Virus record (IMG/VR): IMGVR_UViG_3300035698_022190
Span: 62,001-126,000 of that record
Reading direction: 5' to 3' (one strand)
DNA: 64,000 bases
The notes beneath the pieces are model-generated. The model was not told the DNA's origin and did no database searches. It saw nothing but the letters and a program-made list of their open reading frames with translations. A program made the translations under genes and the position numbers. Positions 2-31,064 of this stretch are shown here, one piece after another (the stretch's first letter is position 1; each line of letters begins with the position of its first letter).

Positions 2-2398
2 ACCATGATTAAAAGTGTTGTTTTAAATCAGGGTGACGGAACTTTGTCTGCAACTGGGGGCACTGTTGGTTATATTACTTGTATAGTCCATAATAATGCT
101 TCAACAGCTATTACGCTAGAATTTCAATTTGATGATAGTATTGGAAACCCAGTTACTGTCGCAGAAACAGTTTCAACTGTTGTTGGGGGAACTGACGGAT
201 CTTCGGGATCTTCTGGCTCAAGTGGGTTGGCTGGAGCAGAGGGTGCAGAAGGAGCTGCAGGCGTGGACGCAAGGACAGTATCTTTAACAACAGACAAGCA
301 AGCTTTTGAATATTTAACAAGTAATGTACTAACTGGGACTACTACATGTACATTGACTGCAACTGCATTAAATACTACAGGAACAGTCTACTATCAATTT
401 TATAAAACACCAAAGGGCGGTGCCGCCAGCTCAGTTCAAAATTCAGCAAGCGCTACATATATATATACAGCTAATAGTTGGTACCCTGATATGCCCGAAA
501 CAATGGAAGTACAAATACGCGAGGGTGCGGTTACTGGACCAATATTAGCGCGTGATTCAATGACTATGATGGCCATTAAACCGGGTACAGATGGCGACGA
601 TGGTCTAGATGGTACAACTGTTTTAGTAACTAACGAAGCCCATTCTTTACCGACGACTAGCGCAGGCGCAGTAACTTATACAGGTTCCAGTACTTATATT
701 AAAGTTTGAATAGGAACTACTGCAATCCCAGTTGATCTTGTATCTAGCTATGCTTCCCCATCATTTAGAGTTACTGCAGCAGGTACAGGTATTACAGCGG
801 GAGGAATCTGACAGGATAGCACTTATGTTGTTGGTGTTGGTAATGCAAGTGCGGTAACCACAAACCCAGCCACAGTAAATTTAACTATAACAGTAAAAGA
901 TGCAGCAGGCACAGAAATTGTATATACCAAAATTCAGTCCCTTTCTCAATCTATTGAGGGTGATACGGGCGGAGCAGGAACTGCGGGCGATCCAGGTACT
1001 AGAGGGTCCTTACATTTTGAGGGCAACACTACAGAGATTTTGTGAACAAACGCCGCAGCAGAAGTAGTTATTGCTGATGCTATTGACGATGGTATTATTA
1101 CCGCAAAACAGAATCTAGATTCAGTTACTTTAAAAAATTCTGGTGTTGGGAGTTGAGACGGTTTTTGGGACACTACACAAAGTCCGGACGATTGAACTGT
1201 AGTTGAATACTATATGAATGGAAGTTTACTTGTGCAAGGAACTGTAACTGCCGCAGCACTAAACGCTGATAGTATTTTTTCAAAAGATTATACTCTAGGT
1301 ACTAATGGCTCTATTAAAACCAGCGGACGCGCTTATGGTGCAGCTTCAGCTGGTATATATTTAGGTAATGCTAGTAGTACGAGTAAATTAGATGTAACAA
1401 GTGCGAGTGGTACAAATTACATGCGCTGAGATGGGGCAAAATTTTCAGTTTATGGCGACGGTATGTGAATAATTGATTCATCGTCGGGACTAGTTGATGG
1501 TCCCATGTTAACTAGACATGTAGGAGATAGTCAAGGAGAGATCTTTACAAGCACTTCTACATCTTATGCTAAAAAAATGCAAGGTTCCTGTATATTAAAT
1601 TCTTTAGATACTAAAATTACTTGCGCTTATAGAGGATATAATTTAACTAATGATGCTGAAGGAAGGGTATGATTTAAAGTTTACTCTATTAACAACACCG
1701 TAACAGGATATAATACTGAGGTTGCAGCTGAAAGTGGTTGATTTGGAAACGGGGAAAGCACTACTAGCTGTTTTGTTGGAAATACACCAATTACTTTAGC
1801 TAGCGGAGAACAAGAATATATTAAATTTATAAAACCTGGAGATCTAGTACTTGGAAAGGATAATCAAATTAATGAAGTACAATCTATTCTAACCCCTACC
1901 CTTGGAACACAAACCTTATATAGAATAAATAAAAGTTTTCCTTTTGTAACAGGAGGACACCCATTTTGAACACAAAACGGCTGAAAAGTTATTGATCTAG
2001 ATGCCTATACAGAACTCCCTAATTTAGATGGACCTGTTACGGAATTTGAGCCTGGAGATTTTTTGCAAAGAGCGTCAGGAATCTTGGCACCGCTTAAGTC
2101 TATCGATTCTGTCCAAGAAGATCCAAACACACAATTATTTCATTTAGACGTTACAAATAATAATACTTATATTGCAAATAATTATGTTGTACATAATAAA
2201 GCAACACAATATCCACGTCACGTACCTGGTGTAATTTCATTATCTTTAAGCTCAAATCAAAAAGGCGCTCTTTGTTATTGAGAAGTATGATTAAAGCATG
2301 CTGGAGGAACTGCAGTTATAAGGGACATATCTATTGATGCAGGAAGACAAGGTTTAGACGAACTAGAAGACCACTACTATCCATTTAATGAGCTATAA
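2..2398 (+). CDS. Tail fibre/virion protein with C-terminal Hint domain; TGA read as Trp; probably 5'-truncated by window edge
   Basis: ORF-track pieces 5..709, 1214..1429 and 2063..2281 share one frame interrupted only by 13 TGAs and end at TAA 2396-2398. Gly/Thr/Ser-rich collagen-like stretches. Hint motifs CFVGNT...GHPF(W)TQNG(W)K...YIANNYVVHNK. Confidence 0.88.
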
Positions 2399-2406
2399 TA
2401 ATAAAG

Positions 2407-2435
2407 TTGCTTTTAAACTGAGAATTACTTATATT
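2407..2435 (+). promoter_or_regulatory. sigma70-type promoter TTGCTT-N17-TATATT
   Basis: Intergenic; the same TTGNNN-17-TATATT pattern occurs at 7 sites in the window. Confidence 0.6.
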
Positions 2436-2460
2436 TAAGAGAACATAAACCAGCTTAAAC

Positions 2461-2792: not shown

Positions 2793-3554
2793 ATGCCGCG
2801 ATCGCCAATACATATAGAAAGCCTAAAAAACAGATTTAAGAATTTTTCATTTAACAACACTGTAATTTCGGTGTTGTTAGGTGTCATTTTTATTGGCGGT
2901 ATCTATGCTAATTATAAAATAGGGCAGTTACAAACTGATGTAGCACATTTTCAAAATGAAGCTGCGTCCTCTGATACAATACATCAATTAGACTCCACTA
3001 CAATTAGTAAACTGACTTTAGACGTTAGAAATATCACATCAGATAACGGCGAGCTACAAACTTTTATTGACCGTTTACATGGTGAAATAAGAACACAAGC
3101 TGACCTTATAGCTTCTTTAAATGACAGTGTAGCTAATGTTGAGACAGATGCTGACACAATAATTATAGATGGCGACGGACAAGACATCCGTAGATTTAAT
3201 ATAGCTAAGGGGGCTTTTAAGCTTAGAGGCTATTTTCAATTAGATAGTCCATACGAAATAACATTCGACGAAATGGCGGCCAAGATAGCTCTTGAGCTGA
3301 ACATCGTTCAGCTCCGTAATGGCCAGTGGGAAGCCTTCGTCGATACAAAAAACCCAAGTTTGACGGTCACCGATCTCGTAACAAAAGTTAATCCGTACAA
3401 ACCGGCCTGGTGGCAAAAGATTAATCTAAGCGGCGGGGTATATTTGCAAAGCAATCAGCTTGGCTTAATAGGTGGATTCGGGTACAACAAATTCTTAGGA
3501 TTAATTGGCTATGATCCTCGGGGATACATGCTTGGTGTTCAGTATGTCTTTTAA
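2793..3554 (+). CDS. Membrane-anchored coiled-coil protein, possible lysis accessory (spanin-like)
   Basis: N-terminal TM helix, coiled coil, C-terminal beta-strand pattern ending in F; near endolysin. Confidence 0.55.
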   Translation: MPRSPIHIESLKNRFKNFSFNNTVISVLLGVIFIGGIYANYKIGQLQTDVAHFQNEAASSDTIHQLDSTTISKLTLDVRNITSDNGELQTFIDRLHGEIRTQADLIASLNDSVANVETDADTIIIDGDGQDIRRFNIAKGAFKLRGYFQLDSPYEITFDEMAAKIALELNIVQLRNGQWEAFVDTKNPSLTVTDLVTKVNPYKPAWWQKINLSGGVYLQSNQLGLIGGFGYNKFLGLIGYDPRGYMLGVQYVF

Positions 3555-3785: not shown

Positions 3786-3883
3786 AGGCCCTAGGTGTCA
3801 GATGGGTGACAGTGAGTCTTCAAAACTTTTCCCCCTTGTGTCCAAAGCAAGGTGCGTGGGTTCAATTCCTACAGGGCCTGCCA
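3786..3883 (+). tRNA. Opal suppressor tRNA (anticodon UCA), probably Trp-accepting
   Basis: Acceptor AGGCCCT/AGGGCCT-G-CCA, loop CTTCAAA (TCA at 3820-3822), T-arm GTGGG-TTCAATT-CCTAC, long variable arm. Confidence 0.85.
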
Positions 3884-3900: not shown

Positions 3901-4503
3901 ATGTGGAATTTTATACAAAAGATAATAGATGCTTTACTTCGTAAACCCGTTCAGGTACTTGATCCTGTCGAGACAGCTTTTCAGATAATTAATATTACTG
4001 ATCAACTTCCTTGGCACCCAACACGTAAATGGGCAAAAAGGGGTTTATCACAGATACGAAAAGTGGTAGTGCACCAAGCCTATTGTTCTTATACGCGAAC
4101 AACACTACAAGGCATAAATAAATATCATATTACCCCTGGCCCAAATAATCATTTATCTCCAAACGGTGCTCCGCATATTGCGTATCATTATGGAATTATA
4201 GGTGACGGAACAGTATATCAAACAAATTATCTTAGTAATTCAACCTGGCATTCTGCCGGGCATAACACTGCCAGTATTGGCATATTAGTGTTAGGAGATT
4301 TCCATGGTCCCACGAGAGTAGGTGCAGATAAGCATCCTACCCGTAATCAACTACTTAGTCTAGAGAAACTATTAAATTATTTAGTAGAAGATGCTCAGAT
4401 AAGTATTACAAGCCACGACATTTTTGGTCACGCCAACTTTGGTAAAATAAACTGTCCTGGCACTGCAATAACACGCTTTCTCGATGAATACAGGAGAACC
4501 TAA
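3901..4503 (+). CDS. N-acetylmuramoyl-L-alanine amidase (Amidase_2/PGRP-like endolysin)
   Basis: VVVHQ, IAYHY, WHSAGHN..SIGI, GH....KINCPG motifs. Confidence 0.9.
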   Translation: MWNFIQKIIDALLRKPVQVLDPVETAFQIINITDQLPWHPTRKWAKRGLSQIRKVVVHQAYCSYTRTTLQGINKYHITPGPNNHLSPNGAPHIAYHYGIIGDGTVYQTNYLSNSTWHSAGHNTASIGILVLGDFHGPTRVGADKHPTRNQLLSLEKLLNYLVEDAQISITSHDIFGHANFGKINCPGTAITRFLDEYRRT

Positions 4504-5585
4504 TGAGAAAAATAACAAACATGAGTCTAGATGTTGTAGACCATATAATGAATGATAATCTCGTAAAGTTAGCGGAGCTTGTAGAGCCCTTATCGGATGA
4601 AGCTAAAATTGCTTATGTGCCGTCTTATGAAGAACAGCAAGCAGCAAATGAAAAAGATTTCGCTCTTGTTCTGTGAGACCCTAAAGACGGGACAATCCAT
4701 AAATATGCTCTTTACACATCCGAATTAGCGGAACTCAACCTAGCTTTCTTAGCAGATCAAAAAGACAATTTACCAGAAGAAGTAATTAAAATAGCTGCTG
4801 CAAACTTAACTGCCGCTGCAAAAAATTATGACCTTCCTGTACCTGAAGTCTTAAAAGATTATGCATCAGATAAATATATATACAATGTGCTAGATACACG
4901 TAAAATCAGCGAGGTTGGTTTTATAAATAAAACGGCTGCGGTCGTTGAACATAAAAGTTTTGCTTGGGAAGCGGAAAAGAAATACCCGCTTCATGACAGG
5001 CTAAATATAAAGAAAGCTGCTGCTTTCTTTGAAAAAAACCATTATAAAATGGCTATCGCCAAAAAATCAGAGTTTTGTCAAAATGTTATAGAAGCAGCAG
5101 AGGAACAAAACGTACCACTTGACAAGACAGCAATTCATAAATATGCTAGTTTTGACACTATAATTAATCCTGACTTTGTGGACCACATGAAGGTACGCTT
5201 AAGTTATTTAAAAGATAATAAATCAGAGCAGCCACACAAAGATTCTTACAATGAGCTTATTAAACGTGCAGACACAAAACATCAACAACCTGTTGAAGAG
5301 TTAATGCGCAACGTAGAGGAAGCTGACATTGCTTCTGGCTTATTTAATACCTATGGTAAAGGCGTCGCTGATCCATATGAAACTACACTCTCTGTAATTA
5401 AAGTTGCAGAAAGAACAGTGGACGGGATGACAGTATCTTTAGAGCAACTTCGTAATATTCCAGACGGAGAGCTTACATCTCTGATAGGTAATGGCGGAAT
5501 ATCCGAACTAAAGGCTGAAAATGGTCTTGATGTTTTTGAAGCTTTACCCAGACCGGTAAGACAGGATATTTCAAACTTATTCTAA
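4503..5585 (+). CDS. Hypothetical virion/head protein; one TGA (4674) read as Trp
   Basis: ATG at 4503 overlaps the amidase stop and is in frame with 4887..5585; only TGA interrupts; repeated K-x-A motifs. Confidence 0.75.
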
Positions 5586-8035: not shown

Positions 8036-9910
8036 ATGCCTGTCAGAAACGTGACTGAGGCAGATCTAGAACAGATTACGAGTAAAAAATACCCTAATCC
8101 GTTTTTTGATTTAGCCAACAATTACATTCCTAAAAATATTAAAACCCTTTTTAAGTTTTGTAGAGCCTATTTTTATACAAATGGTTTTCTACGAAACGTT
8201 GTTACTAAACTTACTGAGTATCCTATAACAGACATTTTATATGGCACCATTGATCCTGCCGCAAAAGAAAAATATGATGTAGCTTTATATGAAAAATTAC
8301 ACATTAGAAAATTTCTAATTGAAATTGGGCTTGATTATTTTACTTTCGGCAATGCTTTTGTATCCTTTAATATGCGATTTAAAAGATTTTTAAGATGTAA
8401 AAATTGTAACCATACCTTAACTATTGATGAAGCTTCTTTTAAAATGAGAAATTTTGAGCTTGAGTTAAAATCCTGTCCTAAGTGTCAAATGAAAAATGCA
8501 CCCACGGAAATAGAAGACCAAGAGATTAAATCAATAGACTCTTTTAATTTAGTAAAGTGGGATCCAGTAAATTTAGATATTGATTATAATCCATTAACAG
8601 GATCATCTACATATTATTATAACATCCCAGGTAAAATAAGACAAAAGATTATGGCTGGGGATAAAAAAACTATAAAGGAAGTACCAAAAGTTTTTCTAGA
8701 AGCTATAAAAAAGAAGAAAAAAATTGAACTAAATGCAGACAATATTTTCCATTTTAAACGTCCCACTCTTGCCGAAGATGATATGGGATGGGGTAAACCA
8801 ATTATATTGCCAGCATTAAAAGAATTATATTATTTAGCAACATTACGAAGAGGTAATGAAGCGATAGCTAATGAACACATTGTGCCTAAAAAAGCGGTGT
8901 TTCCAGCTAATACAACTACTATGGATCCGTTCACTCAAATGAATTTAGGTAAATGGTCCGGACAAATTCACAACCAAATAAAGAAGTGGAAGGCGGACCC
9001 TAATCATATTGGGGTGTTCCCCATACCTATTGGTTATCAAGAATTAGGTGGAAACGCTCGAACTTTACTATTAACACCGGAAATGAAGTTTATTGAAGAA
9101 TCTGTTATTAATAGTTTAGGAGTACCTTTAGAGTTTATTAAGGGCGGAACATCCTGGACAGGTTCTAGTATTTCATTAAGAATTGTTGAAAATCATTTCT
9201 TAGTTTATCGTGGGTTATTGGCCGACTTTTTAAACTTCTTTGTAATAAAAAAATTATCAGCCCTTTTGTCTTATCCACCCGTTAAGGTTCACTTTAAAGA
9301 TTTAAGAATGACAGATGATACAGAATCAAAACAATTGGCTATAAATTTAAATGCCGGCAATAAAATTTCTGATCATACTTTATTATCTCAATTAGGATAT
9401 GATCCGGAACATGAGGAATTTGCTAAAAAACAAAGTTTTGCTGATGCTCTAGCAGCTGAGATTGAAACACAAGAAACCCAAGCTGAGGCACAAGGTAAGG
9501 CACAAGTTATATTAGCTAGATATAATACTAGGGCCACAAAAGCTGCAGAAGACGAAGTATTTAGATTAAGAGCTGAGTTATTCCAAGATGAATTAAACAG
9601 AGAATTGGGGGCAATCCCTGAGGATCCAATGAAGTTAATTGAACGGTACGCAGTAATGATGTTAAGTATGCCGGAAGCTCAAGCTAAAAAGGAACTACAG
9701 CAATTAGCAATTAAATTGCCTACAACTTATACTCTTGTAAATGAGAGAATCCAAATGATGATGATGGCTAGTATGGAGGGCGAAGAAGAAATGGAAACAG
9801 TAAAATCTTCTGAAGCTCCAAACCAAAAAAAAGTCGGAACCCGTGAAGGGGATAAAGTAAAAATAAAAGGTGAGCGCCACAAAGGCTCCACTAAAGGACA
9901 ACCAAATTAG
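8036..9910 (+). CDS. Putative portal protein with Zn-ribbon insertion
   Basis: Portal-like motifs (DYFTFGNAF, IFHFKRP..GWGKPIILPAL, INSLGVPLEFI..G), CxxC..CxxC, size and context. Confidence 0.7.
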   Translation: MPVRNVTEADLEQITSKKYPNPFFDLANNYIPKNIKTLFKFCRAYFYTNGFLRNVVTKLTEYPITDILYGTIDPAAKEKYDVALYEKLHIRKFLIEIGLDYFTFGNAFVSFNMRFKRFLRCKNCNHTLTIDEASFKMRNFELELKSCPKCQMKNAPTEIEDQEIKSIDSFNLVKWDPVNLDIDYNPLTGSSTYYYNIPGKIRQKIMAGDKKTIKEVPKVFLEAIKKKKKIELNADNIFHFKRPTLAEDDMGWGKPIILPALKELYYLATLRRGNEAIANEHIVPKKAVFPANTTTMDPFTQMNLGKWSGQIHNQIKKWKADPNHIGVFPIPIGYQELGGNARTLLLTPEMKFIEESVINSLGVPLEFIKGGTSWTGSSISLRIVENHFLVYRGLLADFLNFFVIKKLSALLSYPPVKVHFKDLRMTDDTESKQLAINLNAGNKISDHTLLSQLGYDPEHEEFAKKQSFADALAAEIETQETQAEAQGKAQVILARYNTRATKAAEDEVFRLRAELFQDELNRELGAIPEDPMKLIERYAVMMLSMPEAQAKKELQQLAIKLPTTYTLVNERIQMMMMASMEGEEEMETVKSSEAPNQKKVGTREGDKVKIKGERHKGSTKGQPN

Positions 9911-10088: not shown

Positions 10089-10267
10089 TGAATTTTGATG
10101 ATAAAATTACTGAGGTGCGAATATTTCATTTGAATGAGGAATATGAAAAAGTTCAGTATGAAGAGATTCTAAATGAGCCCACATATGAAATATACAGGGA
10201 TGTATTTACATATGATAGGGCAGGACGAGCAATCGTTACTATATGATTTTATAAAGATGAGGATTAA
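10088..10267 (+). CDS. Small acidic protein; TGA 10244 read as Trp
   Basis: ATG overlaps the previous stop; readthrough ends at TAA just before the terminator. Confidence 0.6.
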
Positions 10268-11613: not shown

Positions 11614-11644
11614 TTATAGAAATTGGTTATTAAACTGTTACTTT

Positions 11645-11673: not shown

Positions 11674-11684
11674 TTTTTAAGTTA

Positions 11685-18427: not shown

Positions 18428-19521
18428 ACCTCTGGTTCACCCGTCATACTTCCACTATTATCAATACAGCAAATAATTGGGCCTTTGGCTTTTCGTTCTT
18501 TACCTCTATATTCATATTCAGTTAAGCTTCGTTCTGCAAATCCTTTATAAAAAAGCATTCGTAAAATCGGGTGCTTAATTTTCATCAGCTCAGTAGGAAT
18601 AAGTCTACGTAAGTTATTACCTAAGCGTAACTTATACACACTCTCAATACCCTTTTTAACTTTTTCTCTCATTGTAGAGAGGGCTAAACGTCTATATCTG
18701 CCTGCTAAAGCTGCAATTTTTTTTAACTTATCTGAACTTTTTAATTCATTAATAAGTTTAATTTTCTCTTGATATCCGGTTGATGAATAAGTAGGATCTT
18801 GCTCCAGTCCCCAATTGGTAATTAGGTCGGAAGTCTCTTTAGTTTGAGAAACTGTATGTTCTAACATCTTTGTTGTTGCACGACGTACGCGTCTCTCTCG
18901 TTTATCCTTATGTGTTTTTAAATGCTCTTCTAAACGTTTTTTTGCTTCTTTTAAAGTCCATGCTTTGTCAGCATTTGCTTTATCTTCGGCTTGTTTTTTT
19001 TCTTCATCAGTCCCTTCTCCGGCTGCAATTGCTTCCTGCTTTTTCTTTAATTCATCATCAGCTTGTTGCTGAGCTTGTTGCATCCCTTCGGCTGCTGATG
19101 CTAATTGCTTCTCAAATTCTTCTCTTAGCTCATCAACTAATTTTTTTACTTCTTCGCCCAAAACTTGTGTTCCTATAGTTGACTGAATTTTATGAAGTCT
19201 TGTTAAGTTTCGTAACTCCTTATATTTAACAGAACGCATCAACTCATCCATAATTTGACTATTTAATAAATAATCATAATCAATATCCATTTCTGGATAT
19301 TTCTGAGGGGTGTATTTATATAATGAATCAAACACATCTTGATGTAATTCTTTAAATTGAGGATAGTCAACTTGACCTTCTTCATAGGTATTTGCGATAT
19401 CGGGATTATGAAACCTTACTTCACTAAAAGCTCTTTTATCAAAAGCATCTAACTTAATTACATTCTTTTTAATACGAACTTCTTTTGTAACATCTGTTAT
19501 CTTAACCGATAATTTTCGCAC
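18428..19521 (-). CDS. VWA-domain protein (ViaA-like), exon 1
   Basis: LGNNLRRLIPTEL, KGPIICCIDNSGSM (DxSxS). Confidence 0.88.
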
Positions 19522-19530
19522 TCTAGCCTC

Positions 19531-20661: not shown

Positions 20662-21053
20662 TAATACCTCGTTTGTAGGATTGGAAAGTGTATATTGACT
20701 TGTCTTCGTTTTTGACAGAAAATCCAATATCTGTGTTTTAAATCTCTGCTTGCTGTATGCTCTCTATCTTTGGTATGTGTCATCAAGCCCTCAATTGTAT
20801 CAAACTCATGTGGGTAGATGTTACACACATAGCTGGGTACAGTTGCGTGAATATCAGCAAAACCTAAATTAATGTGTGTAACTAAACCCAAAGTATTCTC
20901 ATGTATTGATAAAGTACAAGCTGAGATATGATCAGACGTGGAAGAATATGTAAGTATGCTATCTTCTTCAGACACTATCTTATGTTTTCGTATCCACGGT
21001 GTCTGTTTTATCTCCTTTATCAGTTTCTTTTTCGTTGTCATTTTTCTGTTCAT
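20661..21053 (-). CDS. Hypothetical protein
   Basis: ORF whose stop overlaps the MoxR start. Confidence 0.5.
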   Translation of the reverse strand: MNRKMTTKKKLIKEIKQTPWIRKHKIVSEEDSILTYSSTSDHISACTLSIHENTLGLVTHINLGFADIHATVPSYVCNIYPHEFDTIEGLMTHTKDREHTASRDLKHRYWIFCQKRRQVNIHFPILQTRY

Positions 21054-21405: not shown

Positions 21406-24400
21406 ATGGCCAATAATTTACTTCGACATGATGCGCAGAATGCAGCAATTCAACGCGCACTAAAAAAATCTATACAAGAATCTTTCCCTATTGAATCCGG
21501 GGACAAAAAGCTAACGCTTACCAACATTCAAATCCCAAATACCCTTGAGAGTTGAGACTTTCCCAAACAAAAAGAATTTAAGCTAAATCGCAAAAGCTGG
21601 CAAGTCCCTATATATGCGGATATAAAAATTACTGACGTGAATGGTACCCGTATTATTAGTCAAAAGAAAAAGGCTAAAATAGGAAATATCCCCATCTTAA
21701 CAAATAGGTTTACTACAATTATTGATGGTAACGAGTATCAGACAACAAACCAGCTTCGTCGTAAATCTGGAATTTACTCTCATGTAAAACAAAATGGTGA
21801 GCTTGAGAGCGAATTTAATCTTGCCCAGGGTTTTAATTTCAAGATGCAATTAATTCCAACTACACAACTATTTGTGCTTATTTTGGGTAATCGTAAGTAT
21901 CGTTTATGGACCCTATTAAATGTTTTGGGCATGGATGATAAATCTATTGAAAAATTTTGAGGTAGATCTTTACTAGATATAAATAAAAAAGGTGCTTTAA
22001 ACACTGAAGTATCAGAAATGACTTCTATTTTTAAGAAGGTCTACAACAGAGAGCCGAAAGACTATAAAGAAGTATTAGCAAAGCTTAATGAATATTTTAA
22101 TATATATACAAAAGTAGATCCAGAAACCACAAAATTTACATTAGGAGAAAGTTTTGAGCATGTTACTGCCAAGACTCTTTTATCTGCTTCAAAAAAACTA
22201 TTAGCTATAAACAAAGGAACCGCAGAGCCAGATGAGCGTGACAACCTAATCTTTAAAAAACTCTATTCAGTTGAAGATCTGCTAGGTGCCCATTTTGAAA
22301 AACAAATTCCTGTTATTTCACGTAAACTGGCTCGGTCCTTATCACTAAAAGATAGCGTGGGAGAGATAATTAGTTCCAGCACTTTTGGTAAAACCGTTAA
22401 AGAATTCTTTACAACGGGCGATCTATCAGCCACACCACCACAAACAAACCCAGTAACTATTGTAGATGCTTGGCGCAAAACCACACCTATGGGTACGGGT
22501 GGTATACAAAGTCGACACTCCATTACAATGGAATCTCGTAATTTACAACCTACACATTTAGGGTATCTAGACTCATTGGCAACCCCTGAATCTGGACGTG
22601 TTGGTGTCACGGTGGGTCTAGCATCCGAAGTGGAAAAAGAGGGCAACGATATGACTACCCCGGTGTACACGCCGGCTGGTAAAGAAAAAAGATTAAAACC
22701 TCTAGAATTTTATAATGCCAAAGTAGGGTTTCCTGATCAATATAAATTTGAGGGAAAGGCTCTTATGCCTAAGAAAGGAAAAATTAAATCAATGTATAAG
22801 GGGGATCTTGTGGAGCTTGATTCTACCGAAATTGATTATTATCTTCGATCAGCTAAAACGATGTTCTCGTTTGCTACCAATTTAGTTCCCTTCATAGCTA
22901 ACACACAGGGTAATAGAACTTCCATGGGATCTAGAATGATGGTTCAAGCTATGTCCCTGGTCGATAGAGAGGTTCCTTTAGTACAAACTAAACGTTCTGA
23001 TGGTGAAACCTACGAAGATCTTTTAGGTAATTATTTAAACCCTGTTCTTGGTGTAAATGAAAAAGGTAAGCCTTATAAAACAGCTAAGGTAACTAAAATA
23101 GCCAATGACTACGTACATTTAGAAACCCCGGGTGGTATTAAATTAAAGCGTGGTTTATATAAAAATTTTCCACTGAACCAAGACGGTTTTTTAAATTCAA
23201 CTTCTTTAGTAAAAGTAGGAGACTCTGTCACTACTTATCAACCTTTAGCTGAGAATAATTATTCTCGTGGTAAAACACTTGCATTAGGTAAAAATTTAGT
23301 TGTAGCATATATGCCATACAAAGGATATAATTATGAGGATGGGGCCGTTATTACAGAATCTGCTGCCCAGAAATTATCGCACCAGATGATACATAAGGCC
23401 AACATCTTCTTTAGCCCTAAACTTACAAACTTTAATATTAAGAAATTCTTGGCCTGGTATCCAGACACTGTCAAGCAAGATAATTTAGCTAAACTGACGG
23501 AGGAAGGGCTTCCTAAAGTGGGCCAAATTTTTCAACCTGGGGAGTATTTGGCTGCCTATCTCGTTGAAAAAGATATGGATGATATAGATAGAGCTTTAAA
23601 AAAATTAGACAAACATACGTTCAGTCAATATGCTAAAAAACTTGTTGAATGGGATGAAGATGAGCCTGGGACAGTTATTGATGTAAAAAAAGTTGGACGA
23701 AATATAGACATATATATAAAAGCAGTTCATCCTTTTAAAGAAGGTGACAAACTTTCAGGAAGGTTCGGGAATAAAAATATTGTAACCAAAATTATTCCTG
23801 ACGATGTTGCCCCACATAGGAAAGATGGCACTCCTGTGGAAATTATGCTGAACCCACATGGGGTCCCATCACGTATGAATATTGGGCAGCTTCTAGAGAC
23901 AGCTGCTGGCAAAATCGCTGTAAAAACAGGTAAGCCTTATATCGTTGATAATTTTTCCGACCCTAATGACGATACATCAAATAGAGTATATGATGAGCTA
24001 AAAAAACACGGCCTTGAAGCAGATGAAAAATTAACAGATGGGACAACCGGAGAGGCTTTTGATAATAAAATTTTTGTAGGAAATCAATACTTCCTTAAGC
24101 TGCGCCACATTGTTAAAAAGAAACAAGGGGTCCATAGTTATGGTAGCTATGATGTAAATGAGCTTCCTGTTGGTAGAGGGGCGCAAAAGACAGGTACTAT
24201 GGAAACCTATGCTTATTTAGCACATGGAGCTAAAGCAAACTTAGCTGAAATGTCAACCGTTAAAGGACGCTCTAATGAAGAGTACTGGCGTAATCTTCAA
24301 CTAGGGTTGCCGCCCGTCCCGTCAAACAAAAATTTTATTTTTGATAAAATGTTAGCCCATTTAAAGGGGGCTGGTATTAATATTTCAAAGAAAGGAAATA

Positions 24401-27400
24401 AATTAAGAATTTTTCCTTTGTCAGATAAAGAAGCAATCAAAATGTCTAATGGCGAAATTAAGGATCCCGGAGCCTTTCTGGTAGGTAAGAATTTAGCTAC
24501 TAGAAAGAATGGACTATTTGATCCAGAAATTACTGGAGGCTTAGCAGGAACACATTGGTCACATATTAAATTAACAACAGCCATACCAAACCCAATGTAT
24601 TCAGACGCTATAATGAAGATATTAGATTTAACCGAAGCACAATTAAATGATACCATTGCTGGGAAATTTAAGGTTAATGGTAAAACAGGTGCTCCCGCCA
24701 TTGTTGCTGCTTTAAAAGAAGTAAATGTAAAAACAGAGATTACTAGCTTAAAGAAAGAATTAAAAACGGCTCCTCCTACAAATGTGAATAAACTAAACAA
24801 AAGAATTAGATATTTGCAGACTTTAGATGAGTTGAAATTAGGAGCTGTAGACGCATATACGATGAAAGTTGTGCCGGTATTACCGCCTGCATTTAGGCCC
24901 ATATATCCTTTACAGACGGGCGATCTAATGATCAGTGATTTAAATAAACATTATCGTGATATTGGTACAATTAATATTGCGTTGAAAGGAGCGAAGGAAG
25001 ATTTAAGTGCTTCGGAAATGGCGGAGGCTACAACCTCTCTTTATAATTCAGTAAAAGCTTTACAAGGTTTTATTGATCCAATAAATTATTCAAGTAAAAA
25101 ATACAAAGGTATTATAAAAGAATTGTCCGGTAAGCAAGCTCTAATTCAAGGGGCAGCTTGGGCAAAACGTCAAGACATTAGTGCACGGTCAACTATTACT
25201 GTGGAACCAAGTTTAGGTCTTAACCAACTAGGATTACCTACAGATATGGCCTATAAAATGTTTAAACCTTTTGTTATACAAGATTTAAAAACCCAGGGTT
25301 TAAAGGCCTCCACTGCTTTAAAAGAGTACCAAGATAAAACAAACTTGGCTTTTAACTCATTAAGGAACGTAGTAAAAAATAGACCTATAATTCTAAATCG
25401 AGCACCATCGCTCCATAAGCACTCTGTTCAAGCTTTTTGGCCCCAATTAATTACCGGCAAAGCTATCCAAATGAACCCTTTAATTATGAAAGGATTTAAT
25501 GCGGACTTTGATGGAGATACTATGTCAATTATGACACCCGTTAGTGCTTTAGCTGTAGAAGAAGCTAAGGGAATGCTCCCGAGTAAAATTCTTTTTAAAC
25601 ACGGAGATAATTCTCTTGTTCCTACAATAGACCAGGATTATTTATATGGTTTGCATGCGCTAAGCCAAGTTGAAAAAGTATCTGCCAAGAAATTTTCAAC
25701 TATAGCAGAAGCGAAAAAATCGGGAATTTCTTGAACGACACAATTTAAATTAAAAAATAAAAATATGACTATAGGTCAATACTATTTAAATGATAAATTG
25801 CCTCCATCTTTAAAGGACTTTTCCAGAATTCTCAATAAAAAGTCTGTGCGTGATATATTAACGAAGGTCGGAAAAGATCATAAGGGTTACTTTGTTGGGC
25901 TAATTAATTCTTGGAAAGATTTGGGCGGTTTCTATGCTTATAAAGTAGGGAATACCATATCATTAACTGATTTTGCAAACAGTAAGTCTTATCGTGACGA
26001 CATTATTAAGAAAGAAATGCCAGCTATTAATAAATTAAAAGGTAAGGCACGCATAGATGCTCTTAATCGCTTAACAAAAGATGTACAAAAAGCACAAGAC
26101 AAAACTTTTAAGGGCAAAAATAATATGTATAAAATGTTGATAGCTGGATCATTTTCAAAGCCTGATTCAGTGCGACAAATTTTATCTATGCCGGGTGTTT
26201 TAAATGACTTATACGGCAAACCGATTTCAATTCCTGTAACTAAAAGTTATGGAGAGGGTCTTGATTCAGCAGGCTATTTTACATCTTTATATGCGGTTCG
26301 AAGCGGAACTGTTGATAGATCAGTAAATACACAAGATACGGGGGCTTTAAATAAAACATTATTAAATGTGACCCGAAGGTTATTAATTACAACAGAAGAT
26401 TGTGCAACTCGAAAAGGTTTAGATCTTCCTGTGAATGGTAAAAACGTCTTAGATCGATTTATACTGGAAACAATTCCGGGAGTTGTAAAACGTAACCAAT
26501 TAGTAGATTCACAGACATTACTGAAATTAAAAGCAAAGGGAATAGTTACCGTAAAAGTTCGTAGCCCACTTACATGTGAAGCTGTCGAAGGCATTTGCCA
26601 ACATTGCTATGGTTTATTACCAAACGGTCAGTTACCTTCTGTAGGGACAAACGTTGGTGTGTTGGATGGACAAGCATTGACTGAGTCATTTACCCAGAAT
26701 GTTATGCGTACCTTCCACACCGGCGGTACTGCTCTAGGTGGGGGCGGGGTTACTGAGGGCTTCCCTCGAATGGAACAGTTATTAAAAGTTCCAGAAAAAC
26801 TTAGCCATAAAGCTACTTTAAGCACTGTTAAAGGAATAGTAAAAACTATTTCAAAGAATTTAACAGGTGGATATAACCTTCGTATTGAGGGATATGGTAC
26901 TATAAATGATAAAGATTTTGTTATTCCCCCAGGACGTTCCCCTATTGTAAGTATTGGGGACAAAGTAGAGCCTGGAGATCCATTAAGCGATGGCGTAATT
27001 AAGCCACAAGAATTGGGAGCTTTGACAACACACTTAGAGGCACAAAATTATCTTGTAGATGAAGCTTCTCAAGTAATGGGAGGAGGTTTCTTCCGTAAGA
27101 CATTTGAAACAGTTATTCGTGGTATCTCAGATAATGCTGTTGTGACTGAGGCTCCGGATAGAAGTGGTTTTTTACGTGGAGATAAAACAACAAAAAGCTA
27201 TATAGATAAATTAAATAGAGATCGAAAAAAAGAGAAATTAGAGCCCATTAAGTATAACTCATATTTTAAATCAATTGACACATTAAATACAGACTCAGAT
27301 GATTGGCTTACAAAAATAACTTCTAACAGAATCAAAGCCGCTCTAATGACAGGAGCAGCTAAAGGTCAATATGCAAACTTAAAGGGAAAAGACCCTATAC

Positions 27401-27465
27401 CCGCATATATCTACGGAGAAAACTTTGGTAAACAAATCATGCCAGATAAAGGAGAATTTTACTAA
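21406..27465 (+). CDS. Single-polypeptide fused beta-beta' DNA-directed RNA polymerase (~2019 aa); 3 TGA read as Trp
   Basis: One frame with TGA at 21553, 21958 and 25732; TPESGRVG, GYNYEDG, GDKLSGRFGNK, NPHGVPSRMNIGQ, LNRAPSLH, NADFDGD, RSPLTC..ICQHCYG, MRTFHTGG. Confidence 0.93.
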
Positions 27466-28673
27466 TGAGTAAATTTTTTAAGGAAGCAAAGAAGAAAAAG
27501 AAAAATACAAAGTTTAGAAAAGCTATGCAAAATATGGGTTTTGTAAATTCACTACAAGCTAGTCGAGTTAAATGGCCCAATGATTATGCTATGAAGGATA
27601 AGGATTTTACTGATGTTATTTTTGGAGCTTCTCCAGCCAATAATATGGCACAATCATTTATGCAGGGTAAAAAACTTGATACCCTGCAACTAAAAGAAAA
27701 AATTGAGTCTTTAATTAGTAAAGGACATGCCAAGCAAATTGGTACAAAACAAAAATATCTCTTAGTTGGGTACTTGTTTGAATATACATCAAGACGAGGT
27801 AAATTAGAAAGTATAAAAGGTATTCCAAAAGCAAACGTGAAAGGACTTGCTCAAGCTATTCGTAAGACAGAGAATAAATTAGAGCCTATCGATGGTACAG
27901 CGGGTATGACAACTATGGGACTTATTTTGGCTAATATTGGTATTGGTTTGTCTTTATCTGGTTTAAAAGAAGATAGTACAAGTCAAGGAATTCAGAGTTT
28001 TATTAGTACGGCTAAAAAAAGAAACAACATGCCTAATCTTGAATTAAAAATGATTGACAATCCTTTAGAAAGCCATTTTAACCCTAAAACGAATTATATA
28101 CAAACAGGTAGAATTAAAGGAATAGCTGCACATGAATTTGGGCACGCAATTAATTCTAAACGGTTCGGGCAAATCTTTGGTAAAAAACCAGGGGCCGCAA
28201 TTTCTGCTGGCCTATATCACGGGTTAGCTGATTATGTACCTATGGTGGGGCGCTCATTAGGCACACTTGGTATGGTTCCTATGTTACCCTTGGCAGTCGC
28301 CGCCCCATTAGCTATTTCGGATAAGCTGCAAAAAGCTATAAAAGGAAAAAGACGAAAAAGTATGCGTTATAGGGTAGGTAAATGGGTAGAAGACCATCCC
28401 GGAAGTTTGATGGGTGGTGCTATGATTCCTAAGCTAATAGAAGAAGGTAGTGCTACGGGAAGAGGTATGGCTGAAATTTTACGACAAACCCCCAAGCCAC
28501 AACAATTGGCCGCACTAAGAAAAGGTCTTGGTGCTACTGGTCCTGCTTTTCTAACCTATGCAACAATAGCTGGCATACCGGCAGTTGCAGGATGAGCTTT
28601 TGGTAAAAAACGTAAGATACAAAATAAATTAAAGACGCAGGAAAAGAACGAATTTCCTTTCAAAGTAAAATAA
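27465..28673 (+). CDS. Virion-associated protein with HExxH metallopeptidase-like motif; TGA 28593 read as Trp
   Basis: AAHEFGH...EE..A; readthrough ends at TAA abutting the next ATG. Confidence 0.7.
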
Positions 28674-30062
28674 ATGTCTAAATTTTTTAAAATTGCTTCG
28701 GAACTACAGCCACAACAAAAACGTGTGCTCAAAAAACTTGAGACTACCGATAGACTTTTGGTATATCATGGTTTAGGTTCTGGTAAAACTTTAACAGCTT
28801 TAAAAGCTAGTGAAAAGTTTAAAATGCCTATTACCGCTATAGGTCCGGCAGCTTTGAAAGAAAATTTTGGTAAAGAAAAAAGAAAGCATGGGGTAAAGGG
28901 CGCTCGTCCTAAATATTTTACTTATAGTAAACCTCCTAAAAATATCCCAGAAAAAAACATTGTTGTTTTTGATGAAGCACATCGCATGGGTAGAATGGAA
29001 TCTCAAAGATCCCATTATCCAGACAAATACAAAGGCGCTAAAACTCTTATGCTTACCGGAACACCTATCCGTAATGAACCTTCTGAATTAATTCCAATTA
29101 TGCGTGGGCTAGACATTAAAGTTCCACGCGATAAAAAGAAATTTGATGCTGGGTTCATAAAAGAAACTAAACAATACCCAGGTCTTTTTGCTAGAGTATT
29201 TAGAGGGGTAAAACCAGGTGTTATTAAACGAGGTAAAAATTTAGACATTTTAGAGAACGCTTTTAAGGGTAAGGTAGATTACCAGGGTTCAACGGAGAAA
29301 GGCCATCCTAGGGTCACTAGCGAGCGAATAACGACCGTTATGACCGATAAGCAGCGGGCAGCTTATAGAGTAGCTTTAAAAGGATCCGCTAATTTAAGAT
29401 ATAAAGTTAAACATGGCATATCACCAAGTAAAACTGAAGCACGCAATATGAATGCCTTCCTGACAGCTACAAGACAAATATCTAATAAACCTGGTAAATT
29501 TAATTTAAGTGCAACTTCTGCAGATGCCCCCAAGTTAAACAGAGCAATGAAAGAAATACAAGAACGATACACGAAAGACAAGAATTATAAGGGAGTTACT
29601 TATTCAGCTTTTCTTGCTCATGGTATAGACCCAATGGAAGATAGGCTTAAGAAATCTAAAATTCCATATGCCCGATTTACGGGAGAGACCTCAGATAAAG
29701 ATCGCAAAAGAATTATTAAAAGCTTTAATACCGGAAAAACTAAACATCTATTACTATCAGGAGCAGGCGGGGAAGGTTTAGATCTAAAAGGCACAAAACT
29801 ATTACAAGTTTTAGAGCCGCATTGGAATGATCCAACTATTCAACAGGTAAAGGGGCGCGTTAATCGCTATAAGTCCCATGCGCATCTTCCAAAAGGCGAA
29901 CGCAATGTCCGCATACAAACATTTATTAATAAACCACAAAAAACAAAGTTTTTTAGACGTCAGCATAAAGGAACAGATGAATATTTAGAGATGCTGTCAA
30001 AACAAAAAACACAACTTAACCAAGATTTTCTAAAAACATTACAGAGGGCATCAGATGGGTAA
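28674..30062 (+). CDS. SF2 (SNF2-like) helicase/ATPase
   Basis: HGLGSGKT, DEAH, LTGTP, GEGLDL, QVKGRVNR. Confidence 0.88.
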   Translation: MSKFFKIASELQPQQKRVLKKLETTDRLLVYHGLGSGKTLTALKASEKFKMPITAIGPAALKENFGKEKRKHGVKGARPKYFTYSKPPKNIPEKNIVVFDEAHRMGRMESQRSHYPDKYKGAKTLMLTGTPIRNEPSELIPIMRGLDIKVPRDKKKFDAGFIKETKQYPGLFARVFRGVKPGVIKRGKNLDILENAFKGKVDYQGSTEKGHPRVTSERITTVMTDKQRAAYRVALKGSANLRYKVKHGISPSKTEARNMNAFLTATRQISNKPGKFNLSATSADAPKLNRAMKEIQERYTKDKNYKGVTYSAFLAHGIDPMEDRLKKSKIPYARFTGETSDKDRKRIIKSFNTGKTKHLLLSGAGGEGLDLKGTKLLQVLEPHWNDPTIQQVKGRVNRYKSHAHLPKGERNVRIQTFINKPQKTKFFRRQHKGTDEYLEMLSKQKTQLNQDFLKTLQRASDG

Positions 30063-30564
30063 ATTTTTTAAAACAGCAGCAACTGCAAAGTTGATGCGTG
30101 AATATGCAAAAAGGTCTGGTATTACTATGAAAACAATACCGAGAAAACTTAATGATTGGGGATTATTTGAGGAAGGAAGTAAAGCAAAGTACCCTTGAAG
30201 AGATATGGGATTTAGTCGTTCTGACTCTACAAAAATATGGAACCAAATTGAAGGCACAGACGCCGCGCGACAGATAGCCCTGCTGCGTAAAAAACTACCG
30301 AAAGGGGTTCAAGTTCGTGGCTTGGGAGCAACCAAACGACCAAAGGGAAATGAAAACGCATCTTTCTTATTTAAAAAACCCGGCAAAAAAGCTGTGGAAT
30401 TTTTTCCGGCAACACACGGGAAGTCTTTTAAGCCTGTTGAAAAGTATATTGATAAAAAAGTTCCTGATTTGTGGTTTGATGTTGATCATGCATTTAGTCG
30501 AGCTTTTGTAGGAAGAAATTCTAAAGTGTTGCCAATAGGTTCAAAAAACAGAAAAACATATTAA
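30055..30564 (+). CDS. Basic hypothetical protein; TGA 30196 read as Trp
   Basis: ATG 30055 gives MGKFFKTA like its neighbours; in frame with 30205..30564. Confidence 0.7.
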
Positions 30565-31064
30565 TGCCTTTATTTTTTAATACTGCAACCTATGTTATAA
30601 AAGAACGCCAGCATGAATTAAACGCTGAGGTACTTGATGGCCGTTTAGAGCTATTGCCAAACAACGAGCACGTCTATATTGTAGCACACCATCCTAACAA
30701 ACAATGGTCTTATAACATTGGCTGAATCGATGAAGGGCCATTATCTAAAATGTGAGAACAAGTAAATGCTTTGGGACATATGCAAAAAATCGATAAGCCA
30801 CATTTATATTATGAGGCTATTCCGAAAAGATTTTATAAAGCCTATCAAGAATTATTCAAATTTCAAGACTTGCAAATTGATAAGGATCCGAAAAAACCAA
30901 AGAAACTTGTAAATGATCCTAAGCCTAATATAATTGATATGACTGGCAAAAAACCAGTTGTAGCTCAACCAAGGGTGGAAAGAAGCTCAAATTCGGGGGA
31001 TCCTAAGCTACAATACCCTAACGAACGAGCCACATATACTTACAGGCCTCCCAGCAAAAGATAA
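30564..31064 (+). CDS. Hypothetical protein; TGA 30723 and 30753 read as Trp
   Basis: ATG overlaps the previous TAA; in frame with 30771..31064. Confidence 0.7.

What the first reader, a model, noticed from the sequence alone, without database searches (positions are those of the whole stretch)
2..31064. Two genetic codes in one genome: TGA=Trp on + strand late genes, TGA=stop on - strand genes
Seen: 22 in-frame TGAs in 7 plus-strand genes (13 in the tail gene; 4674; 10244; 21553, 21958, 25732; 28593; 30196; 30723, 30753). The Hint motif HPF*TQNG*K fixes the residue as Trp, and all + genes end in TAA/TAG. Minus-strand genes use ATGA stop-start coupling (48069, 54723, 55319, 55864, 57901, 58287, 60719, 63714). 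Known: stop-codon recoding limited to late genes occurs in phages of standard-code hosts. Notable here: the endolysin and portal are TGA-free, while the RNAP and tail gene are gated.
Basis: partly seen in the sequence, partly recalled or inferred. Interest (0 to 1): 0.75.

Follow-up and report, generated by a model that had tools for sequence, protein, structure and literature searches.

The report
Late-gene TGA-to-tryptophan recoding in phage
A 210-kb salt-lake phage writes its virion, packaging and tail genes with TGA meaning tryptophan and carries its own unusual TGA-reading tRNA, while its early genes stay readable in the standard code; the strategy is already known in phages, and this is a well-documented new example with an odd tRNA.

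Summary

TGA = Trp is supported at 9 of the 22 window sites by homologues that use TGG:
- 1982: W in 128/146
- 21958: W in 62/63
- 25732, 21553, 4674, 10244 and 28593: W in the nearest relatives
- 30723 and 30753: TGG in an orthologue that in turn has TGA at a window TGG

Genome-wide, about 129 TGAs lie evenly along genes of the virion, packaging and tail modules. Replication and metabolism genes have none in their cores. TGA is their first stop in 23 of 162 genes, 20 of them inside ATGA overlaps; such junctions number 19 on the - strand and 0 on +.

It has Trp-type acceptor features but a long extra arm. It recurs at the same place, with compensatory changes, in two other lineages, one shown to be recoded, and is absent from the nearest standard-code relative.

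The pattern follows gene modules, not strands. The 'RNAP gated, portal and endolysin spared' idea is not statistically supported; only the tail fibre is TGA-enriched.

This is a new member of a known kind (late-gene code-4 recoding). The tRNA shape is the only possibly new element.

The parts
2..2398 (+). C-terminal 799 codons of a 2588-codon tail-fibre gene (genome 56632-64398). It has 13 in-frame TGA here and 32 in all, and ends in TAA.
   Evidence: PHROG straight-fibre hit and Pfam PB4_spike hit. TGA makes up 32 of 50 Trp codons, an enrichment with p=8.5e-5.
1742..2278 (+). Hint (intein-like) domain at the end of the tail fibre, containing HPF*TQNG*K with TGA at 1967 and 1982.
   Evidence: Pfam Hom_end_hint, Vint and Hint_2 on the first piece and Intein_splicing on the second. 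The Vint match runs across one TGA. Column 1982 is W in 128/146 homologues; column 1967 is variable hydrophobic.
2793..3554 (+). Spanin-like lysis gene, TGA-free.
   Evidence: Weak PHROG Rz-like spanin hit.
3786..3883 (+). tRNA with anticodon UCA (opal suppressor), 98 nt. It has a 7-bp acceptor stem, A1-U72, G2-C71, G3-C70, G73, encoded CCA, a 5-bp D stem and a 26-nt variable region that forms a helix. It lies 17 nt upstream of the endolysin start.
   Evidence: ARAGORN. Rfam tRNA-Sec scores 32.5 bits, below the cut-off of 47. The nearest tRNA in the genome is the phage's own tRNA-Trp(CCA). Syntenic homologues in L012/L013 and L015 show 7 covarying stem pairs and a variable-arm helix rebuilt from different letters.
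3901..4503 (+). Endolysin (N-acetylmuramoyl-L-alanine amidase), TGA-free.
   Evidence: Pfam Amidase_2 at 3.7e-16; PHROG amidase/endolysin.
4503..5585 (+). 360-codon gene of unknown function with TGA at 4674.
   Evidence: The orthologue in standard-code relative L005 has W at that column (44% identity over 358 aa).
8036..9910 (+). Portal protein, TGA-free (5 TGG).
   Evidence: Aligns to the Arash and D69 portals; PHROG portal; binomial p=0.17.
10130..10267 (+). Small gene with TGA at 10244.
   Evidence: Relative L005 has W there.
10300..21053 (-). Standard-coded island between portal and RNAP: glycosyltransferase, a 2.2-kb ORF-free stretch, GP88-like gene, reverse transcriptase (15619-16554), VWA-like gene (ends in TGA at 18415-18417) and MoxR ATPase.
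   Evidence: The same gene set occurs in relatives.
21406..27465 (+). Single fused beta-beta' RNA polymerase, 2019 codons, with TGA at 21553, 21958 and 25732.
   Evidence: Pfam Rpb2/Rpb1 domains. About 50 homologues have 2005-2029 aa. W at 21958 in 62/63 homologues, at 25732 in the 11 nearest and at 21553 in the nearest. Those homologues use TGG.
27465..28673 (+). 402-codon gene with TGA at 28593. It ends in TAA directly before the next ATG.
   Evidence: The nearest homologue, P0271 (58% identity), has W at the column and aligns on to the TAA.
28674..30062 (+). SNF2-type helicase, TGA-free.
   Evidence: Pfam SNF2-rel_dom and Helicase_C.
30055..30564 (+). 169-codon ORF with TGA at 30196. An alternative start at 30205 would avoid the TGA.
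   Evidence: No homologue covers the column, so this site is untested.
30564..31064 (+). 166-codon gene with TGA at 30723 and 30753.
   Evidence: Orthologue L026 has TGG at both columns, and has TGA where the window has TGG (30705).
31109..64000 (-). Early/metabolic block written in the standard code. It has no TGA in gene cores. TGA stops lie inside ATGA overlaps at 48069, 54723, 55319, 55864, 57901, 58287, 60719 and 63714, among others. It includes a tmRNA (33541-33943), 25 tRNAs found by ARAGORN plus 2 more found by Rfam (36145-45601), and tRNA-Trp(CCA) at 40186-40257.

Best explanation
This is a lytic jumbo phage that uses two readings of TGA.

The standard-coded part. Genes for replication, nucleotide and NAD metabolism and most small early genes are written so that the host's standard code reads them correctly. 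These are mostly on the - strand, with two TGA-free + strand blocks.

The recoded part. Genes for the virion, tail, baseplate, terminase and virion-type RNA polymerase carry about 129 in-frame TGA codons that stand for tryptophan.

The agent. The phage encodes one tRNA with anticodon UCA, placed in the lysis cassette on the late strand. It keeps the acceptor-end features of tRNA-Trp, so a host TrpRS probably charges it with Trp. Once made, it competes with release factor 2 and lets ribosomes read through TGA. Full-length late proteins can therefore be made only after the tRNA has accumulated.

Shown versus inferred. Shown here: the TGA sites, their equivalence to Trp/TGG in relatives, the module-specific distribution, the tRNA and its conservation, and the link between the tRNA and recoding among relatives. 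Inferred: a standard-code host, charging with Trp, the timing of tRNA expression, and any regulatory benefit.
For: TGA = Trp:
- RNAP column 21958 is W in 62/63 homologues; 25732 is W in the 11 nearest; 21553 is W in the nearest. Those homologues use TGG and have no TGA.
- Hint column 1982 is W in 128/146.
- 4674 and 10244 are W in relative L005; 28593 is W in P0271.
- Reciprocal TGA/TGG swaps with L026 at 30705, 30723 and 30753.
- PhoH TGAs in recoded relatives align with W and F.

Codon statistics:
- TGG 0.87% plus TGA 0.41% on + genes, against TGG 1.47% on - genes.
- TGA is spread evenly along + genes.
- In - strand ORFs, TGA occurs only in the last 1-42 codons or in 5' extensions.
- Code 4 raises + block coverage from 0.72-0.88 to 0.93-0.97. 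The replication block (genome 7.8-36.5 kb) goes only from 0.94 to 0.95; the other - strand blocks gain 0.06-0.08.
- ATGA junctions: 19 on -, 0 on +.

tRNA:
- One UCA tRNA in the genome. Its closest match is the phage's own tRNA-Trp.
- Syntenic, covarying homologues occur in recoded relative L012/L013 and in L015. None is present in the fetched 36 kb of the standard-code relative L003/L005.

Modules:
- Replication genes (Pol A, RNR, primase, helicase) are TGA-free.
- Terminase has 8 TGA, baseplate 6 and tail fibre 32.

Literature: the same pattern is described by Borges et al. (bioRxiv 10.1101/2021.08.26.457843).
Against: - There are no protein or RNA data, so neither the residue inserted nor the timing is shown.
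- The tRNA has a long variable arm and G73, features that SerRS uses (my own knowledge). Mischarging with Ser cannot be excluded from sequence.
- No release factor or TrpRS gene was found in the phage, so how RF2 is outcompeted is open.
- The host is unknown.
- Thirteen of the 22 window sites have no clear homologue support: 11 tail sites and 30196 have no informative column, and 1967 is a variable hydrophobic column.
- The tRNA lies on the late strand, apparently without the motif found before - strand units. It may therefore be made together with, not before, the mRNAs that need it.
Confidence: 0.85

Rival explanations
1. Leaky, dose-setting suppression rather than a clean switch. After the tRNA appears, every TGA is a contest between RF2 and the suppressor. 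TGA-rich genes then yield less full-length product. The codon serves mainly to hold down low-copy proteins (fibre, terminase, baseplate), and abundant proteins avoid it.
For: TGA use among late genes is heterogeneous (chi-square 125 on 62 df; 0 of 5000 simulations reached it). The tail fibre has 32 of 50 Trp codons as TGA and a 214-codon gene has 9 of 11. A 401-aa gene has 0 of 11 and a 929-aa methyltransferase-domain protein 1 of 18. The major head protein, the tail sheath and the genes with the strongest codon bias are TGA-free. No RF1 gene or other aid against RF2 was found.
Against: A 2588-codon protein with 32 TGAs would hardly ever be finished unless suppression were very efficient. The Trp counts of the head and sheath genes are too low for their zero TGA to be significant on its own. 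This reading is compatible with, not exclusive of, the main explanation.
Confidence: 0.3
2. TGA is decoded as something other than Trp through the long-arm tRNA: Ser via SerRS, Sec, Cys, or Gly as in code 25.
For: ARAGORN labels the tRNA as SeC, and its best Rfam match is tRNA-Sec. It has a long variable arm, a 5-bp D stem and G73.
Against: The informative columns are W, not S, C or G. The tRNA-Sec score is below the cut-off and the acceptor/T stems are 7/5, not 8/5. A1-U72, G2-C71, G3-C70 and G73 are invariant while pairs 4-7 covary, and the closest tRNA is the phage's own tRNA-Trp. 129 Sec sites would each need a SECIS element (my own knowledge).
Confidence: 0.07
3. The whole phage uses code 4 because its host does (for example a mollicute), and the lack of TGA in early genes is chance or mutation bias.
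For: The genome has low GC (36%).
Against: About 162 - strand genes with 422 TGG have no TGA in their cores, whereas 36% of Trp codons in late genes are TGA. TGA closes 23 early genes, 20 of them in ATGA overlaps. The nearest relative uses no TGA sense codons at all.
Confidence: 0.03
4. The TGAs are errors or mark decaying pseudogenes in a defective genome.
For: None found.
Against: Only TGA interrupts the frames, never TAA or TAG. ORF lengths match those of homologues. Identical sequence is present in four other runs. Relatives with the same tRNA have TGA at the same kind of columns.
Confidence: 0.01

Closest known systems
TGA-recoded (code 4) gut phages with standard-code hosts: Agate, Jade and some crAss-like phages (Borges et al., bioRxiv 10.1101/2021.08.26.457843)
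   Same: In-frame TGA aligns with Trp. Recoding sits in structural and packaging genes while the replication genes stay standard. The phage encodes a UCA suppressor tRNA next to the lysis cassette. Close relatives use the standard code. TGA stops are already scarce in the lineage.
   Different: This phage comes from salt-lake and marine samples, not the gut. It is a different lineage: a 210-kb phage with a fused beta-beta' RNAP, distantly related to Salmonella phage Arash. The lysis genes here (endolysin, spanin-like) are TGA-free, whereas Borges et al. found lysis genes preferentially recoded. It has no RF1 or TrpRS, unlike the two Jade genomes. The suppressor tRNA has a long variable arm.
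TAG-to-Gln recoded crAss-like and Lak phages (code 15), validated by metaproteomics (PMC9523058)
   Same: They share the logic of a phage-borne suppressor tRNA and recoding limited to late genes.
   Different: The codon and amino acid differ, and some of those phages carry RF2. No proteomic validation exists for this phage.
Bacterial tRNA-Trp and its opal-suppressor derivatives; tRNA-Trp(UCA) of mollicutes (my own knowledge)
   Same: A1-U72, G2-C71, G3-C70 and G73, and the anticodon loop CU-NCA-AA with only position 34 changed. The nearest tRNA in the genome is tRNA-Trp(CCA).
   Different: Those are class I tRNAs of about 75 nt with a 4-5-nt variable loop. This one has a 24-26-nt variable arm that forms a 5-6-bp helix, and a 5-bp D stem.
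tRNA-Sec (Rfam RF01852)
   Same: UCA anticodon, long variable arm, long D stem and G73.
   Different: The score of 32.5 bits is below the cut-off of 47, the acceptor/T geometry is 7/5, and the first pair is A1-U72. The decoded columns are Trp.

Membership tests
Phage late-gene stop-codon recoding, TGA to Trp (code 4 in a standard-code setting) | In-frame TGA inside genes whose full length matches that of homologues | tested here: met
   The RNAP has 2019 codons against 2005-2029 aa in about 50 homologues. The gene at 27465-28673 aligns with P0271 beyond its TGA.
Phage late-gene stop-codon recoding, TGA to Trp (code 4 in a standard-code setting) | TGA columns correspond to Trp (TGG) in relatives | tested here: met
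   Nine window sites, with reciprocal TGA/TGG swaps. Column 1967 is variable. Twelve sites have no informative homologue.
Phage late-gene stop-codon recoding, TGA to Trp (code 4 in a standard-code setting) | Recoding confined to structural, packaging or lysis modules, with replication genes in the standard code | tested here: met
   The temporal class (late versus early) is inferred from function only.
Phage late-gene stop-codon recoding, TGA to Trp (code 4 in a standard-code setting) | Phage-encoded suppressor tRNA with the matching anticodon | tested here: met
   tRNA(UCA) at 3786-3883, conserved and covarying in relatives.
Phage late-gene stop-codon recoding, TGA to Trp (code 4 in a standard-code setting) | Host uses the standard code | not testable with these tools
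   The host is unknown. This is inferred from the TGA-free early genes and their TGA stops.
Phage late-gene stop-codon recoding, TGA to Trp (code 4 in a standard-code setting) | Trp actually inserted at TGA during translation | not testable with these tools
   No proteomic data are available, and the run search (kind 'any') listed no RNA run.
tRNA-Sec / selenocysteine decoding | Match to the tRNA-Sec model above its cut-off, with 8/5 acceptor/T-stem geometry | tested here: not met
   32.5 bits against a cut-off of 47. The stems are 7 and 5 bp in all three homologues.
Whole-genome code 4 or code 25 phage of a recoded host | TGA sense codons in all gene classes; Gly at TGA columns for code 25 | tested here: not met
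   There is no TGA in the cores of about 162 - strand genes. The columns are W, not G.
Canonical class I tRNA-Trp | Trp-type acceptor end (A1-U72, G73) and a short variable loop | tested here: not met
   The acceptor end is met and invariant in three homologues. The variable region is 24-26 nt and forms a helix, so the tRNA is class II-like in shape.

The most novel reading that the evidence does not exclude
The opal suppressor is a previously undescribed tRNA design. It combines a tryptophan-type acceptor end and anticodon loop with a class II/Sec-like body (5-bp D stem, helical 24-26-nt extra arm). Selection has kept it in at least three phage lineages, always directly upstream of the endolysin. 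The extra arm would then have a job in the code switch itself. Possible jobs are helping the tRNA beat RF2, making it a poor target for host tRNA-directed defences, or tying its charging or processing to a phage factor.
Probability: 0.25. Interest if true: 0.65.

Novelty: new member of a known kind. Interest (0 to 1): 0.4.

Why it matters
The case extends late-gene TGA-to-Trp recoding from gut phages to an environmental (salt-lake and marine) jumbo-phage lineage. It gives a clean natural comparison set:
- a recoded genome;
- a sister lineage at 69% RNAP identity with no TGA sense codons and no suppressor tRNA in the 36 kb fetched;
- a second recoded clade with the same tRNA at the same place.

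That set is suited to asking how a code change starts and spreads gene by gene. The long-armed Trp-like suppressor is a concrete, testable molecule. If host TrpRS charges it despite its shape, it says something about TrpRS recognition and could be of use as a natural opal suppressor. On the practical side, this genome and its relatives are mis-annotated by standard gene callers, which split the RNAP, portal, terminase and fibre genes.

Tried and rejected
- Megablast of the RNAP region against the phage collection found nothing. tblastn found only distant relatives (Arash, Vibrio D69; about 32% identity), whose residues at 21553 and 21958 were uninformative.
- In those distant phages the RNAP is split exactly where the window has TGA 25732. 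I therefore considered that this TGA was a true gene end, and rejected it: about 50 closer homologues are single 2005-2029-aa proteins with W at that column.
- A single-protein scan of IMG/VR for relatives of the RNAP found none.
- An exact-pattern scan for the tRNA failed. A looser pattern then found two relatives.
- tblastn of the two Hint pieces against phages gave one weak hit and nothing usable. The representative-library search solved this.
- Searches of the genome for RF-1/RF-2 and TrpRS domains were negative.
- A sigma-70-type promoter scan around the tRNA gave fewer sites than shuffles. A k-mer search found no shared motif upstream of + strand units.
- I looked for a DGR or ncRNA in the ORF-free stretch next to the reverse transcriptase. 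There were no template/variable repeats, no Rfam hit and no nucleotide conservation.
- Population variants (TGA/TGG polymorphism) were sought in other runs. Only identical low-depth contigs were found.

Full report
WHAT THE WINDOW IS
The window is bases 62001-126000 of a single 210,208-bp IMG/VR virus record, rated 100% complete by CheckV, with about 36% GC. It is a tailed jumbo-type phage. The genome encodes:
- a portal, an amidase endolysin and a spanin-like protein;
- a very long tail fibre;
- a tail sheath, a major head protein, a baseplate wedge and a large terminase;
- a fused beta-beta' RNA polymerase;
- 27 or more tRNAs and a tmRNA.

Identical fragments occur in several salt-lake metagenome runs. 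The nearest cultured phages are only distant: Salmonella phage Arash and Vibrio phages D69/D181/D148, at about 32% RNAP identity.

CHECK OF THE OBSERVATION
- TAA/TAG-bounded ORFs on the + strand contain in-frame TGA at the 13 stated tail-gene positions and at 4674, 21553, 21958, 25732, 28593, 30196, 30723 and 30753. Site 10244 lies in a small gene.
- The ORFs are real genes. The RNAP ORF has 2019 codons and about fifty database homologues have 2005-2029 residues.
- The tail gene starts 5.4 kb upstream of the window. It has 2588 codons and 32 TGAs in all.
- The eight ATGA stop-start junctions on the - strand are all present.

WHICH RESIDUE TGA STANDS FOR
I aligned homologous proteins from public collections against the window's raw translation and read off the residue opposite each stop.
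- RNAP: 21958 is W in 62 of 63 homologues. 25732 is W in the eleven nearest. 21553 is W in the nearest and variable further out.
- The two nearest RNAP genes contain no TGA at all, and 13-14 TGG. The W residues therefore come from ordinary Trp codons, not from code-4 gene calling.
- 4674 and 10244 are W in the syntenic relative L005.
- 28593 is W in the nearest homologue, P0271, and the alignment continues to the TAA.
- For 30723 and 30753, the orthologue L026 has TGG at both. It also has TGA where the window has TGG at 30705. This reciprocal exchange is the behaviour of synonymous codons.
- In the Hint domain, 150 homologues found with the first piece were laid on the window. Column 1982 is W in 128 of 146.
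- No column favours Gly, Cys or Ser.
- Codon usage agrees. TGG is 0.87% and TGA 0.41% of + strand codons, against 1.47% TGG on the - strand.

In sum, nine of the 22 window sites have direct support for Trp, one (1967) is merely compatible, and twelve have no informative homologue.

TWO READINGS IN ONE GENOME
Genome-wide, about 129 TGAs lie inside + strand genes of four blocks: 0.2-7.8 kb, 37-72 kb, 83-93 kb and 177-210 kb. They are spread evenly along gene length.

In - strand ORFs, TGA occurs only within the last 1-42 codons (median about 8) or in what look like spurious 5' extensions.

Reading TGA as sense changes ORF coverage as follows:
- + blocks rise from 0.72-0.88 to 0.93-0.97.
- The replication block (genome 7.8-36.5 kb) goes only from 0.94 to 0.95.
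- The other - strand blocks gain 0.06-0.08.

Of 162 - strand genes, 23 have TGA as their first stop. Twenty of these lie inside ATGA overlaps with the next start. Junctions of that kind number 19 on the - strand and none on the + strand, where 1-nt overlaps of the TAATG/TAGTG type are used instead.

The divide follows function, not strand. The + strand blocks at 154.7-165.5 kb and 175.0-176.8 kb are TGA-free. The TGA-free - strand block holds DNA polymerase A, ribonucleotide reductase, primase and helicase.

That early genes 'use TGA as stop' is an inference from this architecture. If read through, they would gain only short tails, so they are in effect safe under both readings.

ARAGORN finds exactly one tRNA with anticodon UCA in the genome, at window 3786-3883 on the + strand. 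It lies 231 nt after the spanin-like gene and 17 nt before the endolysin start.

It is 98 nt long and is labelled 'SeC'. It scores 32.5 bits on Rfam tRNA-Sec, below the cut-off of 47. Its structure:
- a 7-bp acceptor stem and a 5-bp T stem;
- A1-U72, G2-C71, G3-C70 and G73;
- an encoded CCA end;
- the anticodon loop CUUCAAA;
- a 5-bp D stem;
- a 26-nt variable region that folds into a helix.

Among the phage's own tRNAs it is closest to tRNA-Trp(CCA).

Homologues of 96 nt lie at the same place, directly upstream of the amidase gene, in two other lineages:
- L012/L013/L014, a 73-kb contig from another sample;
- L015, a 4-kb contig.

Across the three sequences, acceptor pairs 4-7 and one pair each in the D, anticodon and T stems change on both sides without breaking. 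The variable-arm helix is rebuilt from different letters. Pairs 1-3, G73 and the anticodon loop never change. This is a functional tRNA whose long arm is under selection and whose acceptor end looks like that of tRNA-Trp. The identity rules are from my own knowledge of E. coli and B. subtilis TrpRS, not tested here.

LINK BETWEEN THE tRNA AND RECODING AMONG RELATIVES
- The 73-kb relative is itself recoded. Its RNAP ORF has 2041 codons with four TGAs, one apparently at the same conserved Trp column as 21958 (codon 184 there against codon 185 in the window; not aligned). Its portal and PhoH also carry TGA.
- The window's nearest relative is L003/L005 (69% RNAP identity). Its 22 late-strand genes over 36 kb have no in-frame TGA, and it has no tRNA at the syntenic site.
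- On an RNAP tree, the window pairs with that TGA-free lineage (support 100). The recoded 73-kb relative pairs with the P0003 lineage, whose PhoH also has TGA. At least two changes of state are therefore needed. Whether these are two gains or a gain and a loss is open.
- Stand-alone TGA stops are already rare in the early genes of the standard-code relatives: five of six TGA stops are ATGA overlaps. This fits the published idea that depletion of the stop comes before recoding.

THE 'GATING' REMARK
Of the Trp codons in late genes, 36% are TGA.
- The portal's 0 of 5 (p=0.17) and the RNAP's 3 of 14 (p=0.40) are unremarkable. The endolysin has too few Trp codons to test.
- The tail fibre (32 of 50, p=8.5e-5) and a 214-codon gene at genome 1199-1843 (9 of 11) are enriched.
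- A 401-aa gene (0 of 11) and a 929-aa methyltransferase-domain protein (1 of 18) are depleted.
- Heterogeneity overall is real.
- The major head protein and tail sheath are TGA-free, while terminase (8), baseplate wedge (6) and fibre (32) are rich. This suggests avoidance in abundant proteins, but the counts are small.
- In Arash, the RNAP subunits and the neighbouring helicase were among the most abundant proteins found in virions (PMC10585845). The RNAP here sits next to the portal on the late strand and is probably a packaged late product, not a specially gated enzyme. This is an inference.

MECHANISM
Shown: the sites, the Trp equivalence, the modular distribution, the conserved tRNA, and its co-occurrence with recoding.

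Inferred:
- The host uses the standard code.
- Host TrpRS charges the tRNA.
- The tRNA is transcribed with the late strand. A motif, GGTATAAGA, occurs 21 times on the - strand and never on the + strand. It sits ahead of - strand units and is absent before the tRNA.
- Accumulation of the tRNA then allows full-length late proteins.

No release factor or TrpRS gene is present, so competition with RF2 is unassisted as far as known domains show. A dose-setting reading, in which inefficient suppression holds down TGA-rich genes, is compatible with the data and cannot be separated from a temporal switch without expression data.

COMPARISON WITH WHAT IS KNOWN
The pattern matches the code-4 recoded phages of Borges et al. 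point by point:
- Trp at TGA;
- structural genes recoded and replication genes not;
- a suppressor tRNA beside the lysis cassette;
- close standard-code relatives;
- scarce TGA stops.

The differences are:
- habitat (salt lake and marine, not gut) and lineage;
- TGA-free lysis genes;
- no RF1 or TrpRS;
- the tRNA's shape.

A recent survey found that only a small share of jumbo phages use an alternative code, and only a few of those recode TGA (PMC13037316). I found no paper describing a long-armed Trp-type opal suppressor. That is a limited full-text search, not proof of novelty.

VERDICT
This is a new, well-documented member of a known kind. The element worth a bench test is the tRNA.

Noticed in passing
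window 11613-13817: A 2.2-kb stretch with no ORF over 115 codons in any frame and 46% GC against a 36% background. It lies inside the - strand island between portal and RNAP. It has no repeats of note, no Rfam match and no nucleotide conservation with the gaps at the same place in relatives.
   Followed up: partly
window 14014-20727 (- strand): A gene set of GP88-like, reverse transcriptase (RVT_1, 15619-16554), VWA-like and MoxR ATPase genes is kept between portal and RNAP in most relatives fetched (L004, L010/L011, L025; L003 shows the glycosyltransferase and RVT_1 only). No template/variable repeat pair of a diversity-generating retroelement was found in the genome.
   Followed up: partly
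window 21377, 34242, 43407, 46383, 49859, 52111 (and 15 more in the genome): The motif GGTATAAGA occurs 21 times, always on the - strand and never on the + strand, mostly in intergenic DNA ahead of - strand genes. It is a candidate promoter element of the standard-coded genes.
   Followed up: partly
window 5939-7537: The late block encodes a Volactin-type actin homologue (2e-70) followed by a protein with one mitochondrial-carrier repeat (2.9e-10). Both are kept in relatives.
   Followed up: no
window 21406-27465; L001, L002: Beta and beta' are fused into one roughly 2,020-aa polypeptide in this clade. In the distant phages Arash and D69 the gene is split into two, at the spot where the window has TGA 25732.
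   Followed up: partly
L003/L005 10888-13875: The portal gene of the nearest relative has 995 codons, against 624 here. The two flanks align with the window's portal and there is a faint LAGLIDADG match in between, so it probably carries an intein.
   Followed up: no
genome 60217-62706 (window -1783 to 706): The tail fibre has an 830-codon middle part with no TGA, although 32 lie in the rest. That part contains two similar segments, both beginning YF(I/L)KP..GTAIKNG.
   Followed up: no
window 33541-33943 and 36145-45601: A phage-borne tmRNA (108 bits) and a cluster of 25 tRNAs found by ARAGORN, plus two more found only by Rfam (44667-44736 and 45444-45514; anticodons GTC and TTC by eye). tRNA-Tyr is 74 nt, that is, without the long arm usual in bacteria.
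   Followed up: no
window 54723-57090 and 62533-63717: NAD-salvage genes in a row (nicotinamidase-like isochorismatase, NUDIX, NAPRTase), joined by ATGA overlaps, and an RtcB RNA ligase.
   Followed up: no
L025 17392-18168; L011 16731-17543: In the second recoded clade, PhoH carries two TGAs at the same columns in both members. They lie opposite W and F of the standard-code relative.
   Followed up: yes
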